From: Asterias rubens
Lineage: Eukaryota
NCBI RefSeq assembly: GCF_902459465.1
Contig: NC_047072.1
Span: 10,292,001-10,356,000 of the forward strand
Length of the DNA: 64,000 nucleotides
Direction: 5' to 3'
Positions within the stretch are counted from its first letter, which is position 1; the number at the start of each line of letters is the position of its first letter. The translations under genes and the position numbers were made by a program. Of the stretch, positions 158 through 30,300 are shown one piece after another. A model generated the notes under the pieces. It was not told the origin of the DNA. It saw nothing but the letters and a program-made list of their open reading frames with translations, and did not search any database.

Positions 158-3100
158 CCCAGCTAGTCTGAACTTGATGTGTATCCCAGCTGCTGCATCT
201 AAGATCTTCGCCTCCTTAGGGTTGATACATCTTAGCATCATACTAGGGTCACCACGGCAACGGAAGTTGATGAGGTCGCGGTAGTAACGGTAAACTTGTA
301 TATCCTGTATGCAAAGAATGAATTCAAAGTAGTTAGTTAAAAATTGATGTTTTGGGGGCAGATCTGGTCGTGCTGGTTTTCTAGTTCACCAAAGAATTAT
401 CAAACAATAACACCATACGTAGATAGTCAGGCGAGCGGTCAGGGTAACAAACTCAAGACACCATACGTAGATAGTTAGGCAAGCGGTCAAGGGTAACAAA
501 CTCAAGACACCATACGTAGATAGTCAGGCGAGCGGTCAAGGGTAACAAACTCAAGACACCATGTGTAGATAGTCAGGCGAGCGGTCAAGGGTAACAAACT
601 CAAGTCAGCTGAGTCATCAGAGTGGGGGTTTGAATCCCTGTTGAGACAATTGTGTCATTAGGCAAGGCACACAGTTGCTTGTCATCACCTATCCTCACTA
701 ATCGTTGCAAGCTTACTGCCCATTGATGCAACAACCATCCACTTCTCCTGGGTTGTGTGGCTGGTGCAGGGGTGATTTTGTGTCACCTAGGAGGAAATGA
801 ATTCCTGCAACATGTGCGCCCTTTTAGCTGTTGGTGCATCATGCTCCAAAGGAGACCAGAAGGAACATCTTAGTCTGGCCCCTTATTTTTATAATAAGAA
901 TTGTGCATCTATGCTTGCTACAGTTGCACACAGGGAACATGTCTACCCACAATATGTGTTCTCCATTACCTCTGTATTGACCCCTTGCACGCATGTCATA
1001 CGCGGCGACTGTGCCACGCTCACCATTTTGGTGGTCAATAGGTTTACTTGTAAATGCCGCGTCGCCTAAAATGTGCACTTCACTGAATAACGCACAGATG
1101 ACATTGCCCACCCAGTGGAAGCGGTTAAGAGCACCAAATTCAAACTCTGGTGTTTCTGATTAGCAGAGTGTGGGTTCGAATCCCCAGCCGTGACACTTGT
1201 GTCCTTAAGCAAGACACTTAACCATTGCTTCGTCCTTCAGATGGGACGTGAAGTCGTTGGTCCCATGTGTTGTGTAACGCATGTAAAAGAACCCAGTGCA
1301 CTTTTCGAAAAGAGAAGGGGTCCGCCCCGGTGTTCTTGGCTGTGGCTGCTGTATGCGCCGTAGCACCTGACCCTTATAAGGTGCTAAACAATTGGGTCTC
1401 AAAACTCATACTGCGATAACTTATCTTTCTGAAAGTTTGTATATACTCAGCGCCTTGAGTACCTTGTTTGGTAGATACGTGCGCTATATAAGACTTCAAT
1501 ATTATCATATTATATTATTAATATGGCGCATCCAAGTTAATCGATGATGACCTCAGGTGAATTGGGTCAATAACCCAAACTGAGGCCAGAAGGAACATGC
1601 TTAGTCTGGCCCCTTTTTGTATAATGATAATTCTGCATCCAAGCTTACTATTGCACATTAGGAACATGTCTACTCACAATGTGTGTCCTCCATGCTCTCT
1701 GTACAATCTTGGCAGCCTCCTTGGGGTTCAGGGGATAAGTCCTCTTCTTCTTCTTCCTCCTCTTCGTTGGTTGAACTTTGACCTTTGTCTGGCTGGGCCC
1801 GGTTGAGCTGGAGACTACAACGGACTGGACCCCTTGGTGGGATATGTTGGTGACCATCGTGGAACGCTGTCTTTTGACTCTGTGCCACCAGTTCTGAATG
1901 AAGTGGGCGCAGAATTCTCTAAACCTGTCAGTTTAAAAAGAAGAAAGAATACTTTGATTTTACGTTGACTGCCCTATGCTCAGAGGCCCTTATGTTCTAA
2001 CAAACCTTTGTTCCGAAAATCCCCTCGTGATTTACACGCTATTTCGTCTCTCCATTTTCCTCGATTAATATACAAATTTACAAATCACCAACATTATTTT
2101 CAGTATAAAATTTTTCTGTAAAATTGAAAGTACTTACGATATAACAACCGACTCCCCTTTTGACTTTTTGTAACTGCAGTATTTTTCATAGTAGCCTTCC
2201 AGTCTCTGTCTGGCGCTGGCTGTTTTAACAGCTGAAGCCTTGGACGCAACTGAATCCTTTAAACACGAGGGACAACAATAACAACTTCTTAACAAGAATT
2301 CCTCGTTCTCTTTTAGCTCAAGACAAAAGAAATGCAATCAAGTGTTCAAAAATAATAATAATGTAGAGGCACTACTACAAACAAATGCTCCAGTTTGTAC
2401 AGTAGGGCATATTTTAAACCAAGTTAAAGGAACGCGTTGCCTTGGATCAGTCGAGTTGGTCTTTGAAAAGCGTTTGTAACCGTTTGTTATAAAATGCATA
2501 TGGTTAGAAAGATGTTGTAAAAGAAGAACACAATGATCCACACAAACATGCCTCGAAATTGCACGGTTTTCCTTTTACCTCGTCGACTAACACGGTCGGC
2601 CATTTATGGGAGTCAAATTTTTGACTCCCATAAATGGCAAACCGTGTTTTTCGCAAAGTAAAAGGAAAACCACGCAATTTCGAGGCAAACTTGTGTGGAT
2701 CATTGTATTCTACTTTTAAAACATCTTTCCAAACATATGCATTTTATAACAAACGGTTACAAACGCTTTTTATAGACCAACTCGTCCGATCCAAGACAAC
2801 ATGTTCCTTTAAACACCAAGAAGAAAACATTTCGGAGACCTTGTTCCAATTCTATTAATTTTGGTTTTACCCATATTATATACACTGATGTGTGTTAGGC
2901 TCTGTATGCTCAGTACTTTCCCAAGTTCTGTGAAAAAAAAATCACAGGCATGTTACTTGGGTGGGATTTGAACCCACGACCTTTGCAATTCTAGAGCAGT
3001 GTCATACCAAGTAGACCACCGAGATTGACTGGTATTTAGAGGCAGTTTGAATCCTATTTTAGCAGCGGGTACCGCAACGATTTAATAGATGTTAAATTTG

Positions 3101-5011
3101 CAATAGCATGGCTCAGACCCTAATGTGGGGGGGCAAAAGCTCAACGCTAGCTACATACTAATACAAAATTCCAAGACAAAAAACCTGGTTCAACTACAGC
3201 CCTAAATAATACAATATTTCTCTGACACAAAATAGGGACGTCCAAATTTGCTACCTTTGATTGGGTGGTTGTGAGCTTTGACAGTGATTTGTCGGGTGAT
3301 TTTGAGGGTGTTGTTCTGACATCTCTCAGACCTTGTTCACTGTTGATGAATCTACTACCTGTTTGGTGCACCTTGGTGCTCACAGTTGGGTTTAAGATGT
3401 CAAAGAGACGACATCTGAAAAAGATGTACAGACATGACAATGGTTTAATACATGTATTATCATATAGGCCTATGAGGAAATCGCCTATCTTCAGAAGGCC
3501 AGGCGGCTACTTCAAGATGTCATGGATGAGTTGTTGAGAGCTTCAACTTCTAGTTTTGATGGTTTAGTCATAGGTGTGGGTTTGTATCCCGGTCATGATA
3601 CTTACGTGCCCTTGAGCACTACAATTGCTTCTTACCCAGAATGTCTGACTATTTGAACGTCTGGCCATTTTGTTTAACTGGACTTACGATGTATCTATCA
3701 TAAAGTCACATAATTCAAGATGGCGGCCGCCAGCAAGCTTTTGGCGGGAACAGTGCGCCATCTTGTTTTTTCTTTGTTTTCTGCCTTAAGCAAATCTTTA
3801 TCTTTTAATCTAATTCTATTGTTTTGTTTATTAATAATTATATCCTAAAAATGCATTAGCATTTATTATTTAAAAGTCATTCAAATTCTTGTAGAAGACG
3901 AGTAAACAGCTATCCTTCCTTCGTCTTCTATACTTACAGATTGAGAATAAAATAACGTAAATCACAAGAACAACCAACAGCCTGATCCTCTATCCATTAT
4001 TTGGCCTAACTACCGTGGGTCACAGGTATTTAAATGGGTATCAGCGAGGAGACATGTTATTATTGTGTTTTAAATATTCAATTCTGAGGGGATTAATATT
4101 TAACCGCCTTTCTTCGAAGTGAAATGATTTTCAAAATGCTTTATCGAAAGCTGCTGTTAGTGTTTTTATTGCCATGAATTCTAGGAGTGGTTACCAAATG
4201 TGTACATTCCCTTTGGAAACATTTGGAAACTTTTGATAACTGTCATAAGACCAGTATTCTTACTTGGTGTATCCCAACATGCATTAAATAACAAAACTGT
4301 GAAAATTTGGGCTCAATTGGTCATGAATCGAAAGTTGCAAGAGAATAGTGAAAGAAAAAACACCCTTGTTGCATAACTTTGTGTGCTTTCAGATGCATTT
4401 ATAATAAGGCTTCGACCTGAACTCATTGATTATTTGAGTGAGAAATCACTTCTAGAAACATGTTATTTCATAGGGAGACGTTTCTCTTCAATGTTTTATA
4501 CTATCAACAGCTCTCTATTACTCGTCACCAAGTAAGTTTTTTTATCTTCAAGTAAGCGCTAATCCTCAAATCCAATTCGCACCGTGGAGTGGTGATAAAA
4601 ACCTATATATTATTGCTTGCTTGCTTGAAGATAAATACGTTATCATATGCGCGCTCGTGGAAATACAGAAAATATAGCGCGTCTGCGTCTCTATGGTCCC
4701 ATATCCAACTCTGCCTTCAGCTTTGTTGGATATGGGACGCAGAAGTGCTAGAATTTTACGTATTCCACTCGCGCTTGTGTGAAAACTTATAAATAATGCT
4801 AACAACAGTTATTTTTGAGTAATTACCAATAGTGTCCAGTGCCTTTAAAGCTTTACCAACCTTGTCCAATGACCTCTCCATACTCTCTGTAGTTCAATAG
4901 CAGCTGCTGAGCTCCTCTCCTCGGATGATGCGCTCTTCTTCCGAATCAATGCTCGCCGAGATTGCTTGGAGCCCGCCGCTAACTTCAAATCTCGGACGAT
5001 GTTCTCTTCCC
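158..5011 (-). CDS. MFI: MFI/C11orf65-like IQ-motif protein, partial (3' part runs off the left edge; first exon uncertain)
   Basis: Exons 4861-5011, 3255-3414, 2138-2256, 1678-1924 and 158-304 join in phase with GT-AG sites. They give AAKIVQRAWRTHI|DIQVYRYYRDLINFRCRGDPSMMLRCINPKEAKILDAAAGIHIKFRLAG, matching my recollection of C11orf65/MFI (IQ motif, then INPKEAELLDAAAGIHVRFRLGG). Confidence 0.82.
411..605 (+). repeat. Minisatellite, about 4 copies of a 48-49 bp unit
   Basis: The unit CACCATACGTAGATAGTCAGGCGAGCGGTCAAGGGTAACAAACTCAAGA starts at 411, 459, 508 and 557. Confidence 0.95.
1111..1521 (+). mobile_element. tRNA-derived SINE, near full length
   Basis: A-box-like GGAAGCGGTTAAG, B box GGTTCGAATCC, core GTGACACTTGTGTCCTTAAGCAAGACACTTAACC and an AT-rich tail. 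Near-identical copy at about 62285-62632 (+) and a reverse copy at about 31125-31388. Confidence 0.88.
2424..2812. mobile_element. TTAA-flanked MITE (Kolobok-like termini)
   Basis: Imperfect TIRs TTAA|AGGAACGCGTTGCCTTGGATC and GATCCAAGACAACATGTTCCT|TTAA. A related copy lies at about 63205-63590. Confidence 0.75.
2855..3104 (-). mobile_element. Dispersed repeat of about 255 bp with a central tRNA-like core
   Basis: A box (GGTCTAGTTGGT-like) and B box (GGTTCGAATCC-like) lie mid-unit. Copies at about 29870-30125(-), 35535-35790(-), 56265-56485(+), 58330-58570, 61350-61470 and 62635-62820(+). Confidence 0.8.
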
Positions 5012-12010: not shown

Positions 12011-12408
12011 TTAAAGGTAGTGGACACTATTGGTAATTACTCAAAATAATTATTATCATGAAACCTTACTTGGTAATGAGTAATGGGGAGAGGTTGATAG
12101 TAAACAAAAACATTGTGAGAAACGGCTCCCTCTGGTGTGGCGCAGTTTTCGAGAAATAAGTAATTTCCACGAATTTGATTTCGAGACCTTAAATTTATGA
12201 GAATTTGCGGTCTCGAAATCAAGCATCTGGGCTGAAAGCACACAACTTCGTGTGACCATGGTGTTTTTTCTTTCATTATTATCTCGCAACTCCGATGACC
12301 AATATTGAGCTAAATTTTTCACAGGTTTGTTATTGTATGCATATGTTGAGATACACCAAGTGAGAAGACTTGTCTTTGACAATTACCAATAGTGTCCAGT
12401 GTCTTTAA
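12011..12408. mobile_element. Abundant TTAA-flanked MITE family (Kolobok-like)
   Basis: TIRs TTAA|AGG(C/T)AGTGGACACTATTGGTAATT ... AATTACCAATAGTGTCCA(G/C)TG(T/C)CT|TTAA. Full or partial copies at about 4233-4849, 27984-28349, 29459-29845, 33061-33447, 39700-40237, 41445-42075 and 58611-58800. TTAA plus purine-purine termini is characteristic of Kolobok. Confidence 0.8.
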
Positions 12409-13215
12409 CATGTCAATGTATTATCCGGGATAATTAATCGCTCATAGTACTTTAGTTTTTTTATAAACATTTTGTGTTTGTTTAATAATAAGCCCACCAC
12501 GCCCCAATATTTTAGTTGATGCTGGACAAGCAAGCTTGGCCGCATGCTAGCCCCGACCTTTTTGCTAAGATAATAAATAAATATTAGTCTGGCCCCTGTG
12601 AAATGACGTCAGAAGTTAAGTCTCGTTTTTTGACATGAGGGCGCACTTCCAGATTAACGGTGGTAAAAATATTAAGGAGTTGGTGCCTTCAAAGTTTGTG
12701 CACATGGACAATTTTATTGGCCAAAATTGTGAACACAGAGGATGCTGCCAAAGTTTGTTTGTACCCCATCTAACCAATACTGACAATGTTGTCTTACGAT
12801 GGATTTTGCTTTGTGCATGAAATCGAGCCATGTGGCTTATATCCATTTGTGTCTAGGCAGAAATTCAACGACCCTGTTGTTGTGTCAATGCACGAGATAT
12901 TTGACAGTACATGCAATATTGTGAAGGGGGTAGCTTCAGTGCAAGCTGATGCAAGGGATTGATTCCATCAAATGCTTTAATTTGCAGAAAACTACTCGAA
13001 ACAAAATAATTGTGAAACTTGTTGTACTTGCCATAATCACACATTGACCCTCTGAAAGGTGCTGGACTAAAGAACAAAAATTGAAATAGTTTCATTGACC
13101 CAGATTTATAAGATACTGCCATTGTTTTATTAATTCGAACCCCGGCACGCCAGTTGATCAGTCTCGCGGATGTATTATTAGCCAGGCCCCCACAAACACG
13201 GAATTGAAGAGAGCA

Positions 13216-13716
13216 GAGTTAAAACACTGACCTCCCTCAAAACCCCGTCCAAGAGGGGGCCTAGGGGACCTTCAACCAACCCCCATACTCGCACCCTTGA
13301 TGGGTAACAGCGGTGTGGAAGAATGATTGGTCTTCAGTCCCCCTGGCCAAAGAGACTAGAAGAAGATTGACCCCACGCCACGCCCAGGTCCATCTCATCC
13401 CGCATGCAGGACGGAGAACGAGGAGCAGCGAGAATCAGGAAAAAGTGATGCCGGTGTGCCCTTGATCTGCCCGGGTAGAGTGCGTCCGAGGCAGCCACCG
13501 GCGTCGGACTATACAATCCAGAGTCTATTGAACACTACACGTATTGAAATACGTCGTGCCGCACTGGTTGATGGAATACCCTGGGGGTGCTGGGAAGTCC
13601 GTCTCTGTCGGTGCATTTCTTGGGCCGTCTAGCATGGGCCCCGTGGCTCGGAGGCCCCGGCCCCATGTAGACGGCGACAGCGAGGGCGATGGTTGGTTTC
13701 TCAGTGCTATGAACTC
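13216..13716 (-). ncRNA. Putative structured ncRNA, type A copy 1 (core of 501 nt)
   Basis: GC-rich island downstream of TATATAAG (13760-13753), followed by AATAAA (13131-13126). The 5' GAGTT..CACTGA pairs with the 3' TCAGTG..AACTC, and there are several nested hairpins. Not matched to a known family by eye. Confidence 0.6.
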
Positions 13717-13752
13717 GATGAGACCCACTGACGAACAAGCCGTGTGAGAGCT

Positions 13753-13832
13753 CTTATATAGCCTTACTAGCCCGGGAAAGCAGATGACTCACGCACGTCA
13801 AAGGTCCAACCCGCTGGAGAAAAATCTAGAAT
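13753..13832 (-). promoter_or_regulatory. Pol II-type promoter of type A: TATA, AP-1, CRE half-site, HSE-like element (repeated in copies 2 and 3)
   Basis: TATATAAG 13760-13753, TGACTCA 13785-13791, ACGTCA 13795-13800 (ACATCA in copy 3), and aGAAa-aATCt-aGAAt 13818-13832 (one mismatch to the HSE consensus). Confidence 0.55.
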
Positions 13833-14533
13833 GTCTATGACACGTCAAGTATTAAAGCATGATGAAATAAAAAATTGTCAAAATTGAAACGTTGTTTTGT
13901 TCAATGTTCCAGACGTTTCCATGCTACATTCCAAGCCTACATCACCCCCCCCCCCACACCCACACACACAAAACAATAAATAACGAAAAGCAATGAACCT
14001 TGAAAATCAGGGCTGTGTCCTTCGGTTTTTATTGTCCCATTTTCCAAATTGAAATGAATTTTATTTTCGCATTATTCGAAATTTTGTTATACGTGTAAAA
14101 TTAAGCTTATGATAACAATGGACAGAACGGAAAGGAAATGACACAATCAAAACAACACCAAGCACTTTCAACAGAAAGCGGTAAAGTCATTGATTGGGCC
14201 TAATTTTGGTTTGAGTGTTTTCAGCGCTTCTGCATGAGTCCCCATTACTTATCGTAGTTTTTAGAATGTGCTATGTGCATGAAGAAGAAAACCTGAACAA
14301 AATACATGACGCTTTTAATAATATCTCGCAACTTCGACGACCATGAGCTCAATTTTTCACATGTTTGTTATTTTATGCATATGTTGAGATACACCAAGTG
14401 AGAAGACTGGTCTTTGACAATTACCAATAGTGTCCACTGCCTTTAACACATTTTTTTCGCAGTGAGACTGAGAACAATAAAAAACCAAAGACCCGTGGAT
14501 TTGCTTTTGCCGCGAACCATCAAACCATTTTAA

Positions 14534-14893
14534 TTAAAGGGACACACCGGCTTCGTTGGGCTATTTAGGCTACAAAATACACTAAAACATGATTCTAAAG
14601 GTCTTCCAGGAATGGAGAAGAATAGTTGCTAAAGAAACCATCAAATTTGGCCGTTTTTAACGCATTTTCAAAAAAAGAAGGTCACGTGGATTATCCGAAC
14701 CACTTTTTTGGTTCGGATAACCCACGTGACCTTCGGAGATAGTTTTACTTCCAGCCGTATAAAAATAAATTAAAAATATATTACTAAACCAAATTTTCTA
14801 ATTTTTGGTTACAAGAACCATCTATAAAAACATTATTTTTATGATTCTACACCCCTAAATTGCGTAAAACTGTGAGCCGGTGTGTCCCTTTAA
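14534..14893. mobile_element. TTAA-flanked MITE inside each triplicated unit
   Basis: TTAA|AGGGACACACCGGCT ... AGCCGGTGTGTCCCT|TTAA. Copies at about 17187-17543 and 20604-20967. Confidence 0.85.
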
Positions 14894-15824
14894 GTTCAGT
14901 TCAATATAAATTGTACAAACTACTACAAGGTTCATGATTTTGCTCGTGCTGTGAAAATAACGTGGGACATTCCTATAACTTCGGCTTGAATGCAATTTAC
15001 TTAAATTGTGTAATGTTTTTATTTTATTTTAAATGTGACCCATGTGTCACAGTGGGCTCCTCAGAGTTAACTCCAAATTGCACGCTCGGTATGTAAATAC
15101 TTTGATTCGCTAGTATAGGTAAGAAAATCTCCCTTAAAAAATGCATGAATGAGCTTGGAACATAAATTCTTGATAGGCCTTTATATACTTTACAAAACCA
15201 GGCAATAGGCTTATACATCATGTAAACCATGAATGGATGAAAAAGCCTCCCATGGTACGTGTGAACAGAAGCTTGAGTTACAAGTTTCCGGCACACTCAC
15301 GGCTGTTTCCTGTTTCACCAAGGTCAACAGCAGTGTGAATCCATACCATGCGCGACAAACTGACAAAAATGCCAGAGCCTACTAATAATACGCCATGTTG
15401 TCTTACGATGGATTTTGCTTTGTGCATGAAATCGAGCCATGTGGCTTATATCCATTTGTGTCTAGGCAGAAATTCAACGACCCTGTTGTTGTGTCAATGC
15501 ACGAGATATTTGACAGTACATGCAATATTGTGAAGGGGGTAGCTTCAGTGCAAGCTGATGCAAGGGATTGATTCCATCCAATGCTTTAATTTGCAGAATA
15601 CTACTCAAAACAAAATAATTGTGAAACTTGTTGTACTTGCCATAATCACACATTTACCCTCTGAAAGGTGCTGGACTAAAGAACACAAATTGAAATAGTT
15701 TCATTGAACCAGATGTATAAGATACTGCCATTGTTTTATTAATTCGAACCCCGGCATGCCAGTTGATCAGTCTCGCGGATGTATTATTAGCCAGGCCCCC
15801 ACAAACACGGAATTGAAGAGAGCA

Positions 15825-16325
15825 GAGTTAAAACACTGACCTCCCTCCAAACCCCGTCCAAGAGGGGGCCTAGGGGACCTTCAACCAACCCCCATACTCG
15901 CACCCTTGATGGGTAACAGCGGTGTGGAAGAATGATTGGTCTTCAGTCCCCCTGGCCAAAGAGACTAGAAGAAGATTGACCCCACGCCACGACCAGGTCC
16001 ATCTCATCCCGCATGCAGGACGGAGAACGAGGAGCAGCGAGAATCAGGAAAAAGTGATGCCGGTGTGCCCTTGATCTGCCCGGGTAGAGTGCGTCCGAGG
16101 CAGCCACCGGCGTCGGACTATACAATCCAGAGTCTATTGAACACTACACGTATTGAAATACGTCGTGCCGCACTGGTTGATGGAATACCCTGGGGGTGCT
16201 GGGAAGTCCGTCTCTGTCGGTGCATTTCTTGGGCCGTCTAGCATGGGCCCCGTGGCTCGGAGGCCCCGGCCCCATGTAGACGGCGACAGCGAGGGCGATG
16301 GTTGGTTTCTCAGTGCTATGAACTC
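15825..16325 (-). ncRNA. Putative structured ncRNA, type A copy 2
   Basis: Near-identical to copy 1. TATA 16369-16362, AATAAA 15740-15735. Confidence 0.6.
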
Positions 16326-19241
16326 GATGTGACCCACTGACGAACAAGCCGTGTGAGAGCTCTTATATAGCCTTACTAGCCGGCCGGGAAAGCAGATGAC
16401 TCACGCACGTCAAAGGTCCAACCCGCTGGAGAAAAATCTAGAATGTCTATGACACGTCAAGTATTAAAGCATGATGAAATAAAAAAAAAATCAAAATTGA
16501 AACGTTGACGTTCTGAATTTTGGTTTTGTTCAGTGTTCCAGACGTTTCCATGCTACATTCCAAGCCTACATCACACCCCCCCCCCCCCCCCCAACACACA
16601 CAAAACAATAAATAACGAAAAGCAATGAACCTTGAAAATCACTGAGTCATACTGTTTCCAGGGCTGTGTCCTTCGGTTTTTATTGTCCCATTTTCCAAAT
16701 TGAAATGAATGAAAATTTTTATTTTCGCATTATTCGAAATTTTGTTATACGTGTAAAATTAAGCTTATGATAATAATGGAAAGTAAACGGAAAGGAAATG
16801 ACACAATCAAAACAACACCAAGCACTTTCAACAGAAAGCGGTAAAGTCACTGATTAGGCCTAATTTTGGTTTGAGTGTTTTCAGCGCTTCTGCATGGGTC
16901 CCCATTACTTATCGTAGTTTTTAGAATGTGCTATGTGCATGAAGAAGAAAACCTGAACAAAATACATGACGCTTTTAATAATATCTCGCAACTTCGACGA
17001 CCATGAGCTCAAATTTTCACATGTTTGTTATTATTTTTATGCATAATGTTGAGATACACCAAGTGAGAAGACTGGTCTTTGACAATTACCAATAGTGTCC
17101 ACTGCCTTTAACACATTTAATTCGCAGTGAGACTGAAAACAAAGACCCGTGGGTTTGCTTTTGCCGCAAACCATCAAACCATTTTAATTAAAGGGACACA
17201 CCGGCTTCGTTGGGCTATTTAGGCTACAAAATACACTAAAACATGATTCTAAAGGTCTTCCAGGAATGGAGAAGAATAGTTGCTAAAGAAACCATCAATT
17301 TGGCCGTTTTAACGCATTTTCAAAAAAAGAAGGTCACGTGGGTTATCCGAACCACTTTTTTGGTTCGGATAACCCACGTGACCTTCGGAGATAGTTTTAG
17401 TTCCAGCCGTATACAAATAAATTAAAAATATATTACTAAACCAAATTTTCTAATTTTTGGTTACAACAACCATCTATAAAAACATTATTTTTATGATTCT
17501 ACACCCCTAAATTGCGTAAACTGTGAGCCGGTGTGTCCCTTTAAGTTCAGTTCAATATAAATTGTACAAACTACTACAAGGTTCATGATTTTGCTCGTGC
17601 TGTGAAAATAACGTGGGACATTCCTATAACTTCGGCTTGAATGCAATTTACTTAAATTGTTTAATGTTTTTATTTTATTTTAAAAATGTGACCCATGTGT
17701 CACATGGGGGCTCCTCAGAGTTAACTCCAAATTGCACGCTCGGTATGTAAATACTTTGATTTGCTAGTATAGGTAAGAAAATCTCCCTAAAAACAATGCA
17801 TGAATGAGCTTGGAACATAAATTCTCGATAGGACTTTATATACTTGACAAAACCAGGCAATAGGCTTATACATCATGTAAACCATGAATGGATGAAAAAG
17901 CCTCCCATGGTACGTGTGAACAGAAGCTTGAGTTACAAGTTTCCGGCACACTCACGGCTGTTTCCTGTTTCACCAAGGTCAACAGCAGTGTGAAGCCATA
18001 CCATGCGCGACAAACTGACAAAAATGCCAGAGTCGACTAATACGCCATTTCAAAACAGATTATTCGTCAACATTGTACACCAGTGGTGTTTTGTGAGCTG
18101 TTCAGCACGTATTATCCGTATTCGATACCAATTTTCAATTACATTTTCGTCCTTTCGAGGTATTCGGAGTGAGAGTCAACTCCTGCTGCATTACGACGAT
18201 ATTTCATCATGGGGATGCATACTTTGCGAGCAAGATTAACATTCAGATTGTTTCTGTTTCGAGAAAATTCTACCAGATTAAAGGCACGTAAATTTTGTTT
18301 AGTTCATTTTCTGGTTCGAGAAATTCTACAATTTCACAGCACGTCACATTAGTTTGTAAGCGGTGCCGAAACTACAACCCTTTCCTTAAAATAATGCCCT
18401 ATCAAGGGTGCACATTGTTTTGGTAGATGGCACTTTTGGCCAATGAAAACTGTAGTTTCCCTTTGCATTTCTCTTAAAGGAGCTAATTTCCAACGGGTCA
18501 TGTTCAATAAGGTAATCGGACACAAGTTAAAACAAGTAGGCCTACATGCAGGCCAGGTCTGCCGGAGATTATGTTCCCCATTAGGAAAATACTTGGGCTT
18601 TAGGTAAGGAGGATGTTTCAAAAGAGGGCGCTATCAGAAGAAGTTTGTACACAGTTCGCCGTATGGGGGACAGTAAATCAGAAGGCTCAGGGGGGGGGGG
18701 GGGGGGGGGGGGCAAAATCTCATACCCACCACACCGGGCTTTACCCGACTGCCAAAATGGTATCGATCAAAGTTTTGCTGTTATTTCGAGGTAATCTAAC
18801 CAATACTGACAATGTTGTCTTACGATGGATTTTGCTTTGTGCATGAAATCGAGCCATGTGGCTTATATCCATTTGTGTCTAGGCAGAAATTCAACGACCC
18901 TGATGTTGTGTCAATGCACGAGATATTTGACAGTACATGCAATATTGTGAAGGGGGTAGCTTCAGTGCAAGCTGATGCAAGGGATTGATTCCATCCAATG
19001 CTTTAATTTGCAGAATACTACTCAAAACAAAATAATTGTGAAACTTGTTGTACTTGCCATAATCACACATTGACCCTCTGAAAGGTGCTGGACTAAAGAA
19101 CACAAATTGAAATAGTTTCATTGAACCAGATGTATAAGATACTGCCATTGTTTTATTAATTCGAACACCGGCATGCCAGTTGATCAGTCTCGCGGATGTA
19201 TTATTAGCCAGGCCCCCACAAACACGGAATTGAAGAGAGCA

Positions 19242-19742
19242 GAGTTAAAACACTGACCTCCCTCCAAACCCCGTCCAAGAGGGGGCCTAGGGGACCTTCA
19301 ACCAACCCCCATACTCGCACCCTTGATGGGTAACAGCGGTGTGGAAGAATGATTGGTCTTCAGTCCCCCTGGCCAAAGAGACTAGAAGAAGATTGACCCC
19401 ACGCCACGACCAGGTCCATCTCATCCCGCATGCAGGACGGAGAACGAGGAGCAGCGAGAATCAGGAAAAAGTGATGCCGGTGTGCCCTTGATCTGCCCGG
19501 GTAGAGTGCGTCCGAGGCAGCCACCGGCGTCGGACTATACAATCCAGAGTCTATTGAACACTACACGTATTGAAATACGTCGTGCCGCACCGGTTGATGG
19601 AATACCCTGGGGGTGCTGGGAAGTCCGTCTCTGTCGGTGCATTTCTTGGGCCGTCTAGCATGGGCCCCGTGGCTCGGAGGCCCCGGCCCCATGTAGACGG
19701 CGACAGCGAGGGCGATGGTTGGTTTCTCAGTGCTGTGAACTC
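19242..19742 (-). ncRNA. Putative structured ncRNA, type A copy 3
   Basis: Near-identical to copies 1 and 2. TATA 19786-19779, AATAAA 19157-19152. Confidence 0.6.
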
Positions 19743-22700
19743 GATGTGACCCACTGACGAACAAGCCGTGTGAGAGCTCTTATATAGCCTTACTAGCCGG
19801 CCGGGAAAGCATATGACTCACGCACATCAAAGGTCCAACCCGCTGGAGAAAAATCTAGAATGTCTATGACACGTCAAGTATTAAAGCATGATGAAATAAA
19901 AAAAAAAAAAAAATTGAAACGTTGATGTTCTGAATTTTGGTTTTGTTCAATGTTCCAGACGTTTCCATGCTACATTCCAAGCCTACATCACACCCCCCCC
20001 CCCACACACACAAAACAATAAATAACGAAAAGCAATGAACCTTGAAAATCACTGAGTCATACTGTTTCCAGGGCTGTGTCCTTCGGTTTTTATTGTCCCA
20101 TTTTCCAAATTGAAATGAATGAAAAATTTTATTTTCGCATTATTCGAAATTTTGTTATACGTGTAAAATTAAGCTTATGATAATAATGGAAAGTAAACGG
20201 AAAGGAAATGACACAATCAAAACAACACCAAGCACTTTCAACAGAAAGCGGTAAAGTCACTGATTAGGCCTAATTTTGGTTTGAGTGTTTTCAGCGCTTC
20301 TGCATGGGTCCCCATTACTTATCGTAGTTTTTAGAATGTGCTATGTGCATGAAGAAGAAAACCTGAACAAAATACATGATGCTTTTAATAATATCTCGCA
20401 ACTTCGACGACCATGAGCTCAAATTTTCACATGTTTGTTATTTTATGCATATGTTGAGATACACCAAGTGAGAAGACTGGTCTTTGACAATTACCAATAG
20501 TGTCCACTGCCTTTAACACATTTTTTTTCGCAGTGAGACTGAGAACAATAAAAAACCAAAGACCCGTGGATTTGCTTTTGCCGCGAACCATCAAACCATT
20601 TTAATTAAAGGGACACACCGGCTTCGTTGGGCTATTTAGGTTAAACAATACACTAAAACATGGTTCTAAAGGTCTTCCAGGAATGGAGAAGAATAGTTGC
20701 TAAAAGAAACCACCAAATTTGGCCGTTTTAACGCATTTTCAAAAAAAGAAGGTCACGTGGGTTATCCGAACCACTTTTTTGGTTCGGATAACCCACGTGA
20801 CCTTCGGAGATAGTTTTACTTCCAGCCGTATAAAAATAAATTAAAAAAATATTACTAAACCAAATTTTCTAATTTTTGGTTACAACAACCATCTATAAAA
20901 ATTAATATTATTTTTATGATTCTACACCCCTAAATTGCGTAAACTGTGAGCCGGTGTGTCCCTTTAAGTTCAGTTCAATATAAATTGTACAAACTACTAC
21001 AAGGTTCATGATTTTGCTCGTGCTGTGAAAATAACGTGGGACATTCCTATAACTTCGGCTTGAATGCAATTTACTTAAATTGTTTAATGTTTTTATTTTA
21101 TTTTAAAAATGTGACCCATGTGTCACATGGGGGCTCCTCAGAGTTAACTCCAAATTGCACGCTCGGTATGTAAATACTTTGATTCGCTAGTATAGGTAAG
21201 AAAATCTCCCTAAAAAAAATGCATGAATGAGCTTGGAACATAAATTCTTGATAGGCCTTTATATACTTTACAAAACCAGGCAATAGGCCTCCCATGGTGT
21301 GAACAGAAGCTTGAGTTACAAGTTTCCGGCACACTCACGGTTGTTTCCTGTTTCACCAAGGTCAACAGCAGTGTGAATCCATATACTGTACCATGCGCGA
21401 CAAACTGACAAAAATGCCAGAGTCGACTAATACGCCATTTCAAAACCGATTATTCGTCAACATTGTACACCAGTGGTGTTTTGTGAGCGGTTCGGCACGT
21501 ATTATTCGTATTCGATACCAATTTTCAATTACATTTTCGTCCTTTCGAGGTATTCGGAGTGAGAGTCAACTCCTGCTGCATTACGACGATGTTTCATCAT
21601 GGGGATGCATACTTTGCGAGCAAGATTAACATTCAGATTGTTTCTGTTTCGAGAAAATTCTACCAGATTAAAGGCACGTCAATTTTGTTTAGTTCATTTT
21701 CTGGTTCGAGAAAATTATACAATTTCACAGCACGTCACATTAGTTTGTAAGCTGTGCCGAAACTACAACCCTTTCCTTAAAATAATGCCCTATCAAGGGT
21801 GCACATTTTTTTGGTAGATGGCACTTTTGGCAAATGAAAACTGTAGTTTCCTTTTGCATTTCTCTTAAAGGAGCTAATTTCCAACGGGTCATGTTAAATA
21901 AGGTAATCTGACACAAGTTAAAACAAGTAGGCCTACATGCAGGCCAGGTCTGCCGGAGATTATGTTCCCCATTAGGAAAATACTTGGGCTTTAGGTAAGG
22001 AGGATGTTTCAAAAGAGGGCGCTATCAGAAGAAGTTTGTACACAGTTCGCCGTATGGGGGACAGTAAATCAGAAGGCTCAGGGGGGGGGGGGGGGGGGGG
22101 GGCAAAATCTCATACCCACCACACCGGGCTTTACCCGACTGCCAAAATGGTATCGATCAAAGTTTTGCTGTTATTTCTATTCGCTTATATATATAAGCGT
22201 GCAGGGGCCAATTTCATAGAGCTGCTTTAGCAAAGAATTTGTCTAAGCACGAAAACAGCTCGCTTATTCTACACATGTTATTGGCCAAAATTGTATGCTA
22301 TATATATAGCATGAGTCTGATATAGGGGGAGGGCACCAGAATCTCCTGCCACACCGGAGCTGCACCATGTTCTTGGAAAAAAAAAATCGATCCAACCCCA
22401 AACCTGTAGATAATGTAAAACATGCAACAAGAGAAATTGTTACGTTTTACATTGCTATTTTGTTGCTATTATAAAGTTACTGTTGTTTGCTTTTGGTATT
22501 GGAAAGGCAGAGCCGAGACTGGGATCATTCTTAGATGTAATTTTATGACGTGCACGTAGAAGCGTTACTTTCCAAATCAAAGTAAAGATCAATTTCGCAA
22601 TTTTCATGAAAATTAGGAAAATATGTTTCATTATTTTTGTTTTGTTATGAAAATATGCGTATAGTCCAGGACTCGTGTCTGATGTCAGTTTCGTTTTAAA

Positions 22701-22859
22701 TTGACAGAAATTGACTCTGAATTAATTGTTAACTTAAAAAAAAAACAAGTAAAACATATAATAGGCCTAGCATTCGATTCAATATATTTATATTTTAGTG
22801 TATAAGGAAATGGTCTAAGTGAGGCAGCCCGGCGATTGCACAACCAGTAGTAACCAATA

Positions 22860-23147
22860 AGTGCATATATACGTCATGACGCGTCAGCTTATCCTCCTAC
22901 CACAGATAGCTTGCACACTCAGCAATTCCATTGCCAAACGTAGTCTTTGTGCGGGCGTTAAAAAATGACCCACGGTCCTCTAACACTAACAAAACATTCA
23001 TAATACACGACTGACAACACGACGTGAGACTACAAGTACATGACGTCACCCTTTCTGCATAGATACGACATCAAACAATAGACTGTTTACATGCGTAAAA
23101 ATAGACTCGTTACGTGGGTGTTTTTCAGGAGGAGGCGCCTATATAAA
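22860..23147 (+). promoter_or_regulatory. Promoter of type B with TATA box and clustered CRE/bZIP sites
   Basis: TATATAAA 23140-23147, perfect CRE TGACGTCA 23041-23048, ACGTCATGACGCGTCA near 22871-22886, TTACGT near 23110, and CCAAT near 22854. Confidence 0.6.
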
Positions 23148-23162
23148 CCCCTGCCACACTGA

Positions 23163-23510
23163 GCAGAGTTAGGTTTTCTCAGCGGTGCGTTGAAATGCGT
23201 AACAATGGGGACTCCTCACTTCGTCTACATCGCAACCTACATCCCAAGCGACGACGTATGGAAATAATACTTCGCTCCGGGGCTGCTTTTGAGTAGCCCC
23301 ATTGCTCGCCATCTTGATGGCAAACCTTAAGGACAGACTCGGCCCGGGCTCGGCAACCTCCCATAGACGGCCGCGCAGTCACCCTTTAAGGGTGCTAGCG
23401 GTGGGAGGGCGTCGGGGATACCCCGGCCCCACTTGTACAGTCTCTGGTGCGCTTTTGTTGTGCGTTCTGACTTAAGGCGTACTTCATTTAAATATTCGCA
23501 CCGATTCTGT
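23163..23510 (+). ncRNA. Putative structured ncRNA, type B (diverged paralog of type A, core of 348 nt)
   Basis: End pairing GCAGAGT/ATTCTGT and CGGTGCG/CGCACCG. Stems GGGGCT/AGCCCC, GCCAT/ATGGC, CCTTAAG/CTTAAGG, CCTCCCA/TGGGAGG, CACCCT/AGGGTG and GTCGGGG/CCCCGGC. Four motifs are shared with type A. Confidence 0.6.
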
Positions 23511-24189
23511 ATTTGCGGGGGAAAACACAATCATCTGCATCCAGCAAGTCAGCATGTCTTCTGTCGTCACTTCCACGGCAAGGCCAGATAAAATAAAAAC
23601 TTGAAGCTTTATACATGTATGTATTTTTTATTTCTGACGTAAAAAAGGGAATGTTTTAAGGATCTCAGATGAAGAAAAAAAAGAACAGCCGGTTCTCTTT
23701 TTAAATATGTCGGGCGGCCATTTTGGGAAACAAATTAGAGAAAAAAGGCCGCCCTCCCCTTTTTCCAAAAAGCAGGACACTAGATAATTATGTTTTGGGG
23801 CCAACCTGCACGTTATAAAAGGTTTTATTTTTTTTCCCCTGTAAGATGAGACTAAGAGGAGCCACAAGGCTCATCGAGTCCCGATTTCACGAAGAGCTAT
23901 GATAATGGAATGATTTGTGTATCTTTATGCAATCAATTGATTGGAAAAGAGAGTTTTTGGTTATTGAAGAACAATCTCCAGTCACAGTATATGTACAAAA
24001 TACTTATATGCCAGAAGACAAGATCATTATGTAAAATATCCTGAGAGTTTTATTAATACAGTATTGAGTATTCTACAATAAAATTTGACTCGGTCAAATA
24101 AAAAGGATACATGACACTGACAGCACGAAAAATATGAATACTCGTCAAAAAGTGGAAACTGCCAAGTTTGTACCCCCCCCCAACCCATT

Positions 24190-25200
24190 TTATTTCGTCA
24201 GGAACTGCATTACCATGTGTACGCAGACGACACTCAGCTATACATCACGTTTAAATCTTCTCAAGAAAACGCCAATGCATCTATTGCAAGACTTGAGAAA
24301 TGCATCCAAGAGATTCGACGTTGGACACAACAAAACTTCCTGAAGTTAAATGATGATAAGACAGAGTTCCTTCTATTTGGGTCACGTCAACAGTTAACTA
24401 AGGTTTCAGTGCCATACATCTCCATCGGTGATGCTCGGATAGCTCCCTCGCTGAAAGCTCGGAACTTAGGGGTTATTTTTGATTCATCAATGACACTTCA
24501 GCCACACATCAACAACATTGTTCGTTTATCATCATATCACATCAGGAATATAGGTAAGATTCGCAAGTACTTGGACAAAAGTGCCACTGAAAAGGTCATT
24601 CACGCATTTGTTACTTCTCGTCTTGACAACGGCAATGCTCTTCTCTACAGTCTTCCTAACAACCAGATTTCCAGACTTCAACGGCTCCAAAATACTGCTG
24701 CCCGCATTGTGACACTGTCTAGAAAATCGTGTTCTATCACCCCCATTCTGAAACAACTACACTGGCTCCCTATCTCTCAACGAATCATCTTCAAGCTGAT
24801 GCTCATTGTCCACAAAGCTCTTAATGGCAAGGCTCCCCACTATATTTCTGAACTGCTTCAAGTTTACACTCCATCAAGGAATCTTCGATCAAGTTCTATG
24901 CTTCTCCTCATTGAACCCAAGTCTCGACACTCATGGGGTGACAGGTCTTTTTCTTCAGCCGCGCCACGCATCTGGAACTCTCTACCACTTAATCTTCGAT
25001 CTTGTCTTTGTACTGCAAAATTCAAGTCTCTTCTCAAAACTTATCTTATGTCACAGGTTTTCAATGACTAATTTTGTTGTGTCTGTTTTTTCTTTGTGTT
25101 GTGTATTGTTTTTGTTTTGTTTTTGGTTTTACTGCGCCTTGAACACCCAGCAGGGTGGATATGTGCGCATTACAAGTCTTATTATTATTATTATTATTAT
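24190..25200 (+). mobile_element. 5'-truncated L2/CR1-group non-LTR retrotransposon (RT C-terminus plus 3' tail)
   Basis: ORF 24217-25071 has YADDTQLY, KLNDDKTE, RNLGVIFD, LQRLQNTAARIV, LHWLP and RIWNSLP, all typical of L2/CR1-group ORF2. It ends in a (TAT)n tail at 25181-25200. Confidence 0.93.
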
Positions 25201-27322: not shown

Positions 27323-30300
27323 TCAATATGTAAAGAGTTGCTTGAGAGTATCCAGAGTAAGTGCACCAGTCTCTCCTTCCAGGTTGTCTAGGCTGGCACT
27401 AAAAGGGTCAGAAACCATTTGAAAAAAATGTTTATTTTTTATATATTTTTTAAAATTATATTCTTACAGATAAACATTTTTATGGTAATGAAATTTCAGA
27501 AGAAAATATCTGTAATTATTATTTACTTTATCATTTTGAAGGTTGAATATTGGTGATGACATTTAAAGGAGGTAATATTAATTTAAACTTTGGATAAAAA
27601 ACATGCTACACTAATATGGGACAGCAACTAATATTCAAATAAATTTGAATACAAGTATTTCATAGCAAATTAGTTATGAATTAATGACTACAATACAGAG
27701 AAAATTATATCATTTCATCGAAAGAACACAAATAAAAGACCACATCAATTTGTCTTTGTTATTATACAAAGCAGTACATAACTTGTAAACTCAACACAAT
27801 GACATGGGGACTACATTGCATTTGTGTTCCATATCTATTCATAAAGGCACTTGCCCCGATGCCCCTGTTCATTACCTTCGTGCCCCTAGAAATGCTACAC
27901 AAATGGAGGGAAACAATTATTAAACATTTGATCTCATCAAAAACAGCCAAAGCCATTCAACACTGAAACCCAGCCAACCAAAGTTAAAGGCACTGGACAC
28001 TATTGGTAATTACTAAAAATAGTTACGAGCAAAGAAAACCTTACTTGGTAACAAGCAACGGGGAGCTGTAAAACGTTGTGAGAAACAGCTCCCTCTGAGG
28101 TAATGTAGTTTTTGAGAAAGGTGTAACTTCTCACTCAAATGTTAAAAGACTTCAGGTCTTTTTTAGGCATCTGAAAGCACACAAATGTGTGCAACAGTTT
28201 TGTTTTTTCTTTCATTACTCTCTTGCAACTTCGATGATCAATTGCGTCCCAAATTTTCACAGATTTGTTATTTTATGCATTGATACGCTGGGATACACCA
28301 AGTGAGAATGCTGGTCTTTGACAATTACCAAAGGTGTGCAGTGCCTTCAGACTCACAATGATAACCAATAAATATAATGACAGATAAACTGAAGATGAAA
28401 CTATAACAGTCGCAGCATAAAAACATTTCAATAAATTAGAAACGTCTCTCTCCCTCTCTATTGACTTACCTTGTGTGCTTAGCTTGTAGAAACGCATGTA
28501 ACCGTTCCTCTATAGTGTCTCTTACTAGAAAGCGATGAACTACAGTTGGCCTAAACGAATCAATAAAACAAAATACTGGGTGATCAACTTTGATGTTGGT
28601 TTAGTGACAGGTTGCAAACTATATTACACTCGTCAACTATTTAACATGATATATTTACACATAGATTCTTGTCAGTTGATTGGTGGAAAACATATCATAT
28701 GTCAAGCTTTATTTAGGCATGCATTTACTGCCGCGACGCTCCAAACTTCCTTTTGGGCGTCCTATACTGATAAATATAGGACAATTGGGACACTTCACAG
28801 CGAAGCTACATATTTATATGCAGCATTGTTATTAACTTCAATACCGTGGAGTTTCTTAATTGGTCTCAACGTTTCGACTAGCTTGCTCTCACTCACTCAC
28901 TCACCCACTCGGTCACCCACTAGCTTGATTTATAACACACCTGTTGCTTTTTCTGAATTCTGGTTGGATGAACTAATATAGTCTAGTGATGGCGCGATCA
29001 TGTTTTGCGGAAACTCGTTACAGCGCCCTCTTTTGACTTGAACCGTGAACAGCAACTAAAAAACTTCCTTTCTTTTCCAGATTTCTGTTCTTATTTCACA
29101 TTTAAGACCGAGCTGTGTTATAAAACATGTTATGTATAGTAGTCATCCTCAGAAGACTGAAGAGTGTGAGAGATGTGGGCCTATTTATAGGGGTTCAGAG
29201 TTTTCATAAATGTTTGTCTCACCTCGTTTGGCCGATACGATGAACTCTCCCCACAGCTTGTAACTCACTGGCTGGATTGAGAATAGGCTCAACGAGTAGT
29301 ACATGAGTAGCTTCCATGATATTCAGACCCTTGCTTCCGCTGTGTACGGGCATCAGGAGTGCCGTCACACACTCCTCTTGCTTGAAATCCATCAAGTTTT
29401 CCTAGGAAGGAAACAAATTTTCTACACTTGAATTTGCATGTTCACGGCACATCAAATATTAAAGGCAGTGGACACTATTGGTAGTTACTCAAAATAATTA
29501 TTAGCATAAAACCTTTCTTGGTGACGAGTAATGGGGAGAGGTTGATAGTATAAAACATTGTGAGAAACGGCTCCCTATGAAGTGCCATAGTTTTCGAGAA
29601 AGAAGTAATTTTCCATGAATTTGATTTCGAGACCTCAGATTTAGAAATTGAGGTCTCGAAATCAACCATCTAAACGCATACAACTTCATGTGACAAGGTA
29701 GTTTTTTCCTTTCAATATTACCTCGCAAGGTCGAAGACCATTTGAGCTCAAATTTTCACAGGTTGGTTATTTTGTGCATATGTTGAGATACACCAACTGT
29801 GAAGGCTAGTCTTTGACAATTACCAATAGTGTCCACTGCCTTTAATAGAGGGAAATTTGCATGAGAGATTAAGAATATTATTTTCGTTTTTTTTTTACCC
29901 ATATACACCGATGTGTGTTAACACTGTCTACTCAGTACTTTCCTGAGCTCTGTGAACAAAAATCATAGGTATATAACTCGGTTGGGATTCAAACCCACAA
30001 CCTTTGCAATTCTGGAGCAGTGTCTTACTAACTAGACCACCGAGATTGCCTGGCAGCTAGAGGCAGTTCAAATCCTACATGTGTTTACTTTAGCAGCGGG
30101 TACCGCAAAGATTTAACAGATGGAAATTTATTGTAATTATTATACATTTCTGGTAATGAAACCAAGCAGTGTGTGGTATCACCATGTGTGTTTCTACTTG
30201 CCACGTAGATTGTGTTCCTTTTGAAAACTCGTCTTGACCCATTTCACCTGACGTCATCATCAGAAAAATCTTGAATGCGCCATACTGGTGGGCAATTTCA

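What the first reader, a model, noticed from the sequence alone, without database searches (positions are those of the whole stretch)
23140..23600. Type B: compact 350-nt structured unit, single copy in this window
Seen: a two-part end-closing helix with at least six further stems. Alternative partners exist for CAATGGGG (23203-23210): CCCCATTG at 23297-23304 or CCCCACTTGT at 23427-23436, the latter crossing the CCTTAAG/CTTAAGG helix, which suggests a pseudoknot or switch. The downstream AATAAA (23592-23597) lies in a degenerate MITE end, so the 3' end may be TE-donated or defined by another mechanism.
Basis: partly seen in the sequence, partly recalled or inferred. Interest (0 to 1): 0.75.

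Follow-up and report, generated by a model that had tools for sequence, protein, structure and literature searches.

The report
Small conserved sea-star transcript gene
This stretch is most likely a small intronless gene of a sea star, with its own TATA promoter and poly(A) signal and an RNA of about 445 bases without a real protein frame; it is kept in related sea stars, but the elaborate RNA fold proposed for it is no better than chance.

Summary
As helices they are at chance level. Perfect inverted pairs of 7-8 nt are as frequent in shuffles. The fold z-score is about -2 on both strands. No Rfam family matches. A related species shows no compensatory change, and one of its substitutions breaks the CCTTAAG/CTTAAGG helix.

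What holds is a conserved single-copy block. Against that species (organism D), 23072-23359 has 1 substitution in 288 nt, while the flanks have about 7%. The + strand TATA (23140-47), a perfect CRE (23041-48) and AATAAA (23592-97) are unchanged in D. A rival minus-strand TATA is destroyed there. A library guessed to be RNA, from D, holds a 159-nt contig (23189-23347) and nothing on the neighbouring single-copy DNA.

Best reading: a compact intronless Pol II unit on the + strand, about 23171-23615, non-coding or encoding a micropeptide. The constraint lies on the promoter and the first 190 nt, not on the GC-rich hairpin part.

Type B is not detectably related to Type A, which this scan noted earlier on this same window. 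A 7SK-like motif fails the 7SK criteria. A TE-donated 3' end is not supported. The scan holds no look-alike of Type B on other DNA.

The parts
23041..23048 (.). Perfect CRE palindrome TGACGTCA, about 125 nt upstream of the predicted start
   Evidence: Read. Unchanged in organism D although the flanking positions 23039 (substitution plus 5-nt insertion) and 23052 differ.
23072..23139 (+). Proximal promoter block: AATAGACT twice (23077-84, 23100-07) and an ACGTG core (23112-16)
   Evidence: 0 substitutions in 68 nt against organism D. Only length changes, in the T-run and the AGG repeat at 23120-23136.
23140..23147 (+). TATA box TATATAAA
   Evidence: No difference in organisms B, C or D.
23171..23615 (+). 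Predicted intronless transcript of about 445 nt (start inferred 31 nt after the first T of the TATA box; end inferred at the CA 17 nt after AATAAA)
   Evidence: Inference from the conserved TATA and AATAAA and from the conservation boundary at 23600. The ends are not mapped.
23189..23347 (.). Stretch seen as a contig in an RNA-type library of organism D
   Evidence: X20 record 9: 159 nt, depth 17.3, 1 mismatch. X20 depth is 0 on the single-copy flanks 22300-23109, 23353-23595 and 23758-24162. Contigs carry no strand.
23195..23296 (+). First AUG open frame, 33 aa and basic; a 20-aa frame (23205-23267) with a strong Kozak context overlaps it
   Evidence: Both lie inside the most conserved block. 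The single D substitution (23236) is synonymous in the 33-aa frame and T>I in the 20-aa frame, by my own reading of the codons. No Pfam hit.
23270..23480 (+). GC-rich hairpin region: hairpins 23279-23300 and 23309-23322, and a long imperfect hairpin at about 23325-23477
   Evidence: z -2.7 to -3.1 on +, -2.6 on -. Evolves at 4.1% against 7.4% in the flanks, not significant.
23592..23597 (+). Poly(A) signal AATAAA
   Evidence: Unchanged in organism D, while 7 of the next 17 positions (23601-23617) differ.
23616..23633 (+). GU/U-rich stretch downstream of the predicted cleavage site (CA at 23614-15)
   Evidence: Read. The role is inferred from the canonical metazoan poly(A) site layout.

Best explanation
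This is a compact, intronless RNA polymerase II transcription unit on the + strand. It has a CRE (23041-48), further upstream motifs and a TATA box (23140-47), and starts near 23171. It ends by cleavage and polyadenylation about 17 nt after a conserved AAUAAA (23592-97), which gives an RNA of about 445 nt. The RNA has no real protein frame. It is either a lineage-specific non-coding RNA or the carrier of a micropeptide (33-aa or 20-aa frame near its 5' end). Selection acts on the promoter-proximal 100 bp and the first 190 nt or so of the RNA. It does not act on the GC-rich hairpins further 3', so the function is carried by primary sequence, or a short ORF, in the 5' part rather than by the proposed global fold.

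Shown: conservation pattern, motif conservation, absence of ORF and of family matches, one RNA-library contig. Inferred: strand, both ends, polymerase, inducibility through the CRE.
For: Conservation against organism D (counted):
- 23072-23139: 0 substitutions in 68 nt.
- 23140-23359: 1 in 220 nt.
- Flanks: 25 in 340 nt (p = 4e-5 for 23140-23359 against the flanks).
- The drop in conservation begins at 23601, directly after AATAAA.

Strand:
- The + strand TATA, the CRE and AATAAA are unchanged in D.
- The only minus-strand TATA-like box (23608-13) has 4 of 6 positions changed in D.

RNA:
- The RNA-type run X20 holds 23189-23347 at depth 17 and nothing on the neighbouring single-copy DNA.
- That contig starts 18 nt after the predicted start, with no loose upstream letters.

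No coding or family signal:
- No stop-free frame above 74 aa.
- No Pfam hit, no protein homologue, no Rfam hit even at E<=10.
- Three internal T4 runs on the + strand argue against Pol III.
Against: - RNA evidence is one short, unstranded contig in a library whose type is only guessed. It covers 159 of the predicted 445 nt.
- Three RNA runs of organism C hold none of the words.
- Neither end is mapped.
- The comparison species are close (at most about 8% neutral divergence), so constraint rests on few substitutions.
- The list of differences was truncated. I inferred that the hidden ones lie right of 23837. The word shares fit that inference, but it is not proven.
Confidence: 0.45

Rival explanations
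1. A conserved cis-regulatory module (promoter or enhancer-like conserved non-coding element) at 23041-23359. Its low-level transcription is incidental, and the RNA itself has no function.
For: The tightest conservation (1 substitution in 288 nt) covers 100 bp upstream of the TATA as much as the transcribed part, and holds dense factor-type motifs: a CRE, AATAGACT twice and ACGTG. Expression is low and absent from three RNA runs of organism C.
Against: A perfect TATA box and a canonical AATAAA plus GU-rich site are both conserved at a sensible distance. The edge of the conserved region coincides with the poly(A) signal. No neighbouring protein gene for it to regulate is visible nearby; the only ORF of at least 130 aa within about 12 kb is a reverse-transcriptase fragment.
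Confidence: 0.2
2. The last exon and 3' UTR of a longer spliced + strand gene. It would enter through the acceptor-like site TGTTTTTCAG|G at 23119-23129 and end at the same poly(A) signal. The TATA box would be coincidental.
For: A good polypyrimidine-AG acceptor lies 12 nt upstream of the TATA box. All three frames stop within 5 to 13 codons after it, by my reading, as expected of a terminal exon that is mostly 3' UTR. AATAAA is conserved.
Against: The X20 contig starts at 23189 with no loose upstream letters, rather than reaching 23129 and an upstream exon. The T-run and AGG repeat at the supposed acceptor vary in length in organisms B and D. Conservation continues upstream of the acceptor to 23072. 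Upstream lies the minus-strand Type A array, and no + strand coding exon is seen.
Confidence: 0.13
3. One reading: a structured non-coding RNA of about 350 nt (23170-23500) that works through its fold, with an end-closing helix, several stems and an alternative pairing of CAATGGGG that makes a pseudoknot or switch.
For: The complementary segments exist. The GC-rich part 23270-23480 folds better than shuffles, z about -3. Three substitutions in D keep pairing as G-U. In organisms B and D, the change at 23424 with the extra C after 23426 makes the GGCCCGGG/CCCGGGCC helix perfect.
Against: Perfect inverted pairs are at chance frequency. The z-score is the same on both strands. The conserved half does not fold better than shuffles. 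The structured half is not significantly conserved. There is no compensatory change, and one substitution breaks the CCTTAAG/CTTAAGG helix. No Rfam family matches.
Confidence: 0.12
4. A minus-strand transcript, either Pol II from the TATAAA at 23613-08 or a Pol III-type unit from TATTTAAA at 23496-89 ending at the T5 run at 23101-23097.
For: The minus strand is free of T4 runs from 23521 to 23102 and then has T5. The 784-nt contig of X3 ends at 23588, near the start that the first minus-strand TATA would predict.
Against: The TATAAA at 23608-13 has 4 of 6 positions changed in D, and 23489 within the second box is also changed. X3 behaves as a DNA run: it has 11.8 million contigs, its ratio of repeat depth to single-copy depth is like the DNA run X10 and unlike the RNA run X20, and the depth at 22300-22380 is similar. 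Its contig ends therefore say nothing about RNA.
Confidence: 0.05

Closest known systems
Short intronless, TATA-driven, polyadenylated Pol II transcripts without a long ORF (lineage-specific lncRNA or micropeptide genes)
   Same: TATA box, upstream CRE, AAUAAA with a GU-rich element, no intron seen across 23189-23347, no frame above 74 aa, low and patchy expression, and conservation only traceable among close relatives.
   Different: Unusually small (about 445 nt) and unusually well conserved in its promoter and first 190 nt. Function, strand and ends have not been determined by experiment.
'Type A' sea-star non-coding RNA gene of the same window
   Same: Same neighbourhood. TATA box with TGACGT-type motifs upstream, AATAAA at the far end, GC-rich body, unspliced, no protein frame.
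   Different: Opposite strand: Type A's TATA and AATAAA read on the minus strand. Type A is tandemly triplicated. No significant sequence similarity in body or promoter: best blastn E is 0.06, and 86 of 200 shuffles score as well in + orientation with a chain-friendly alignment.
7SK snRNA (Rfam RF00100 and RF01052)
   Same: Size class, and a TATA box at about -30. One stretch (23297-23318) matches CCCCATTG-TCGCCA...TTGAT of the human 7SK 5' hairpin, whose sequence is printed in PMC11351768.
   Different: The GAUC motif is GCUC here, and no GATC occurs anywhere in the unit. The motif sits about 127 nt from the start, not about 35. There are three internal T4 runs. No covariance-model hit at E<=10. 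The end is a poly(A) signal rather than a 3' hairpin with a U-run.
Echinoderm or vertebrate-type telomerase RNA
   Same: A Pol II, TATA-driven, unspliced RNA of a few hundred nt, with a proposed pseudoknot.
   Different: No template for TTAGGG. The only near match in the window, CTAACACTAAC at 22980-90, is at chance level and lies outside the unit. No H/ACA layout was seen by eye, and there is no Rfam hit.

Membership tests
Any described RNA family (Rfam 15) | Covariance-model score at or near the family's gathering threshold | tested here: not met
   The whole window at gathering thresholds gives only two tRNA-like hits elsewhere. For 23000-23800 at E<=10, the only four hits are chance-level and lie at 23557-23764. 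None lies in 23140-23556.
7SK snRNA | 5' hairpin carrying paired GAUC motifs (HEXIM site), stated as the hallmark in PMC10083321 | tested here: not met
   No GATC in 23171-23615. The 7SK-like stretch reads GCUC.
7SK snRNA | Pol III transcript: no internal terminator, ends in a U-run after a 3' hairpin | tested here: not met
   T4 runs start at 23174, 23287 and 23453 on the + strand. No hairpin lies directly before any of them.
7SK snRNA | Type-3 promoter with a PSE upstream of the TATA box | not testable with these tools
   The TATA box is present. No sea-star U6 or 7SK promoter is available here from which to define the PSE.
   Best blastn E is 0.06, and short matches occur on both strands. 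Chain-friendly local alignment in + orientation is equalled by 86 of 200 shuffles. Promoters are no more alike than shuffles, at 44 of 300.
Structured non-coding RNA in general | Folding energy beyond shuffles on one strand, and base pairs kept by compensatory change | tested here: inconclusive
   z is -2 for the unit and about -3 for 23270-23480, on both strands alike. There are 0 compensatory pairs among 8 substitutions, and 1 broken pair. The species compared are too close to be decisive.
Pol II polyadenylated transcription unit | TATA or Inr at the 5' end, AAUAAA plus a GU-rich element at the 3' end, both conserved, and RNA between them | tested here: inconclusive
   The motifs are present and conserved. 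RNA was seen for only 159 nt, unstranded, and the ends are not mapped.
MITE/TE-derived 3' end | The AATAAA lies in a sequence that is repeated elsewhere | tested here: not met
   No second copy of 23590-23900 in the window. Repeat-like depth occurs only at about 23686-23729. AATAAA lies in the conserved single-copy block.
Telomerase RNA | Template complementary to about 1.5 telomere repeats (CTAACCCTAAC-type) | tested here: not met
   No match in the unit. The single 1-mismatch match, at 22980-90, is at chance frequency: 54 of 100 shuffles have at least one.

The most novel reading that the evidence does not exclude
Type B is an asteroid-specific, stimulus-inducible (CRE/TATA) small RNA gene. 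Its invariant first 190 nt are the working part, either as a sequence-specific regulatory RNA or as the message for a 33-aa basic micropeptide. Together with the adjacent triplicated Type A genes it would form a lineage-specific cluster of small non-coding genes that arose independently but share a promoter logic.
Probability: 0.15. Interest if true: 0.55.

Novelty: new member of a known kind. Interest (0 to 1): 0.3.

Why it matters
If the unit is real, it adds a compact and strongly conserved orphan gene to the echinoderm non-coding or micropeptide repertoire. It sits next to another orphan RNA gene array, and its promoter and ends are clear enough to test directly.

The result is also a caution. 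The many stems that can be read from a GC-rich stretch by eye are at chance level here, and the part under selection is not the part that folds. It does not open a long-standing question, and it looks like an ordinary lineage-specific transcript.

Tried and rejected
- **Rfam.** Searched at gathering thresholds and at E<=10: nothing in the unit.
- **7SK.** Pursued because 23297-23318 resembles the human 7SK 5' hairpin (sequence checked in PMC11351768). Rejected: no GAUC, wrong position, internal T4 runs, no CM hit. I did not align the full human 7SK, because that would have meant typing a long sequence. The papers on invertebrate 7SK (PMC2755741, PMC5798955) are not held.
- **Telomerase RNA.** No template.
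- **Kinship with Type A.** None, in body or promoter.
- **Protein coding.** No frame above 74 aa, no Pfam hit, no homologue, and no exact ORF on record.
- **Relatives elsewhere.** Two metagenome scans, one viral scan and a phage blastn all came back empty. The scan's own index has no look-alike.
- **X3's 784-nt contig (22807-23588).** First read as a long transcript. Rejected as RNA evidence because X3 behaves like a DNA run.
- **Minus-strand promoters.** Not conserved.

Full report
**What is in the sequence**

Upstream lie a perfect CRE palindrome (23041-48), two copies of AATAGACT (23077-84, 23100-07) and an ACGTG core (23112-16).

Downstream comes a stretch that is 53% G+C to 23359 and 61% to 23480. 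It is followed by AATAAA at 23592-97, a CA at 23614-15 and a GU/U-rich run at 23616-33.

The unit is single copy in the window. The scan's index holds no look-alike.

**Is the structure more than chance?** No.

- Perfect inverted pairs of 7 nt or more number 4 in 23140-23500, against 3.6 in dinucleotide shuffles. Pairs of 8 nt number 1, against 0.8.
- The minimum free energy of 23165-23500 has z = -2.0 on the + strand and -2.1 on the - strand.
- By parts, 23170-23360 gives z = -0.3 (+) and 23072-23359 gives -0.4. Only the GC-rich 23270-23480 reaches -2.7 to -3.1 (+) and -2.6 (-).
- Equal signal on both strands is what DNA-level inverted repeats in GC-rich sequence give.
- No Rfam family matches the unit at gathering thresholds or at E<=10.

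**Related genomes and RNA**

- Organisms B and C are almost identical to the window. B shows 2 substitutions and 2 one-base indels in 784 nt.
- Organism D is about 8% diverged in neutral-looking DNA. Its DNA contig (X10) spans 22969-24157.
- Counting the listed substitutions:

| Stretch | Substitutions / length | Rate |
|---|---|---|
| 22969-23071 | 7 / 103 | 6.8% |
| 23072-23139 | 0 / 68 | 0% |
| 23140-23359 | 1 / 220 | 0.5% |
| 23360-23600 | 10 / 241 | 4.1% |
| 23601-23837 | 18 / 237 | 7.6% |

- 23140-23359 differs from the flanks at p = 4e-5. 23360-23600 does not (p = 0.12).
- The table of differences was truncated. I take the hidden ones to lie right of 23837, because the contig has 70 mismatches and 36 are listed up to there. 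The 31-mer shares also fit the listed positions: I expected 0.29 for X20 and 0.27 was observed.
- The run X20, guessed to be RNA and from organism D, holds one 159-nt contig at 23189-23347 (depth 17.3, 1 mismatch). It holds nothing on the single-copy DNA on either side.
- Three RNA runs of organism C hold none of the words.
- X3's 784-nt contig (22807-23588) is not RNA evidence. The run has 11.8 million contigs. Its depth ratio of repeat to single copy (about 180-3500) is like the DNA run X10 (170-1090) and unlike X20 (7-38). Unrelated single-copy DNA at 22300-22380 has a similar depth.

**Strand and ends**

- The + strand TATA, the CRE and the AATAAA carry no difference in D. The conservation boundary falls at 23600-23601, right after the poly(A) signal.
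- The competing minus-strand TATAAA (23613-08) has 4 of 6 positions changed in D. The second minus-strand TATA-like box is hit at 23489.
- The X20 contig begins 18 nt after the start predicted from the + strand TATA, with no loose upstream letters.
- I therefore read a + strand unit from about 23171 to about 23615 (about 445 nt), made by Pol II. Three internal T4 runs (23174, 23287, 23453) speak against Pol III.
- Strand, ends and polymerase are inferences and have not been measured.

**Coding**

- No stop-free frame exceeds 74 aa. There is no Pfam match, no homologue among 5.8 billion proteins and no exact ORF on record.
- The first AUG (23195) opens a 33-aa basic frame. The second (23205, strong Kozak context) opens a 20-aa frame.
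- Both lie in the invariant block. The one substitution in D (23236) is synonymous in the first frame and T>I in the second, which is far too little to decide.

**Substitutions against the fold**

- Of the 8 substitutions in 23170-23500, three are C>U opposite G, so pairing is kept trivially.
- Four are unpaired.
- One (23475 A>U) puts a U-U mismatch in the middle of the CCTTAAG/CTTAAGG helix.
- None is compensatory.
- In B and D the change at 23424 together with the extra C after 23426 makes GGCCCGGG/CCCGGGCC pair perfectly. That is mildly in favour of the long hairpin at 23341-23430.

**Comparison with known things**

- *Type A.* This scan noted it on the same window (s1-150278) as a conserved, unspliced RNA gene of about 550 nt in three tandem copies. 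It has its TATA box and AATAAA on the minus strand. It shares with Type B the general design but no detectable sequence. Best blastn E is 0.06, with hits on both strands. A chain-friendly alignment is equalled by 86 of 200 shuffles, and the promoters by 44 of 300. The note that A and B form one family (s1-150120) is therefore not supported.
- *7SK.* One stretch (23297-23318) resembles the human 7SK 5' hairpin (sequence in PMC11351768). However, the hallmark GAUC (PMC10083321) is absent, the position is wrong, T4 runs are internal, and the covariance models do not score.
- *Telomerase RNA.* Excluded by the lack of a template.

**Verdict**

There is a real, conserved, probably transcribed small gene, but it is not shown to be a structured RNA. 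Selection sits on the promoter and the first 190 nt. The hairpin-rich 3' part evolves almost like the flanks.

Probabilities for the readings:

| Reading | Probability |
|---|---|
| Small lineage-specific Pol II transcript, non-coding or micropeptide-coding | 0.45 |
| Conserved regulatory module with incidental transcription | 0.20 |
| Terminal exon entered at 23129 | 0.13 |
| Minus-strand unit | 0.05 |

Interest is modest.

Noticed in passing
window 12300-22220: Three tandem units (start-to-start spacing about 2.6 and 3.4 kb, 95-100% alike), each carrying a Type A gene on the minus strand. The array ends about 900 bp before the Type B promoter, so the last Type A gene and Type B are divergently oriented.
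   Followed up: partly
window 22376-22968: Organism D's contig joins 22375 to 22969. These 593 bases are absent or replaced in D. Organism B has at least 22807-22968.
   Followed up: no
window 23686-23729: A short stretch with repeat-like depth in all runs, and very high depth (about 1190) in the RNA-type run X20, with loose ends on both sides. It looks like a piece of an abundant, expressed short repeat (the GGGCGGCC...GGCCGCCC hairpin region). It lies downstream of the Type B poly(A) site.
   Followed up: partly
window 24217-25071 (+): A 284-aa frame with the C-terminal part of a reverse transcriptase domain (RVT_1, E 9e-6, below Pfam's cut-off). Depth is 10^3-10^5 in the DNA runs, so it is a high-copy retroelement fragment.
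   Followed up: partly
window 2953-3025 (-) and 29974-30046 (-): Two tRNA-like sequences (38 and 37 bits) with mismatched acceptor stems. They are probably SINE heads rather than tRNA genes.
   Followed up: no
window 23424-23426: The window differs from both organisms B and D by C>G at 23424 and a missing C after 23426, inside a GC-rich palindrome. This is either a change derived in this individual or an assembly error in a hard-to-sequence stretch. Contigs of X4 and X20 both end at 23343-23347, just before that palindrome.
   Followed up: no
window 46528-48228 (-): A 566-aa open frame with no Pfam match, the only long ORF in the window.
   Followed up: no
window 18691-18712 and 22081-22102: Runs of 22 G at the same place in two tandem units.
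   Followed up: no
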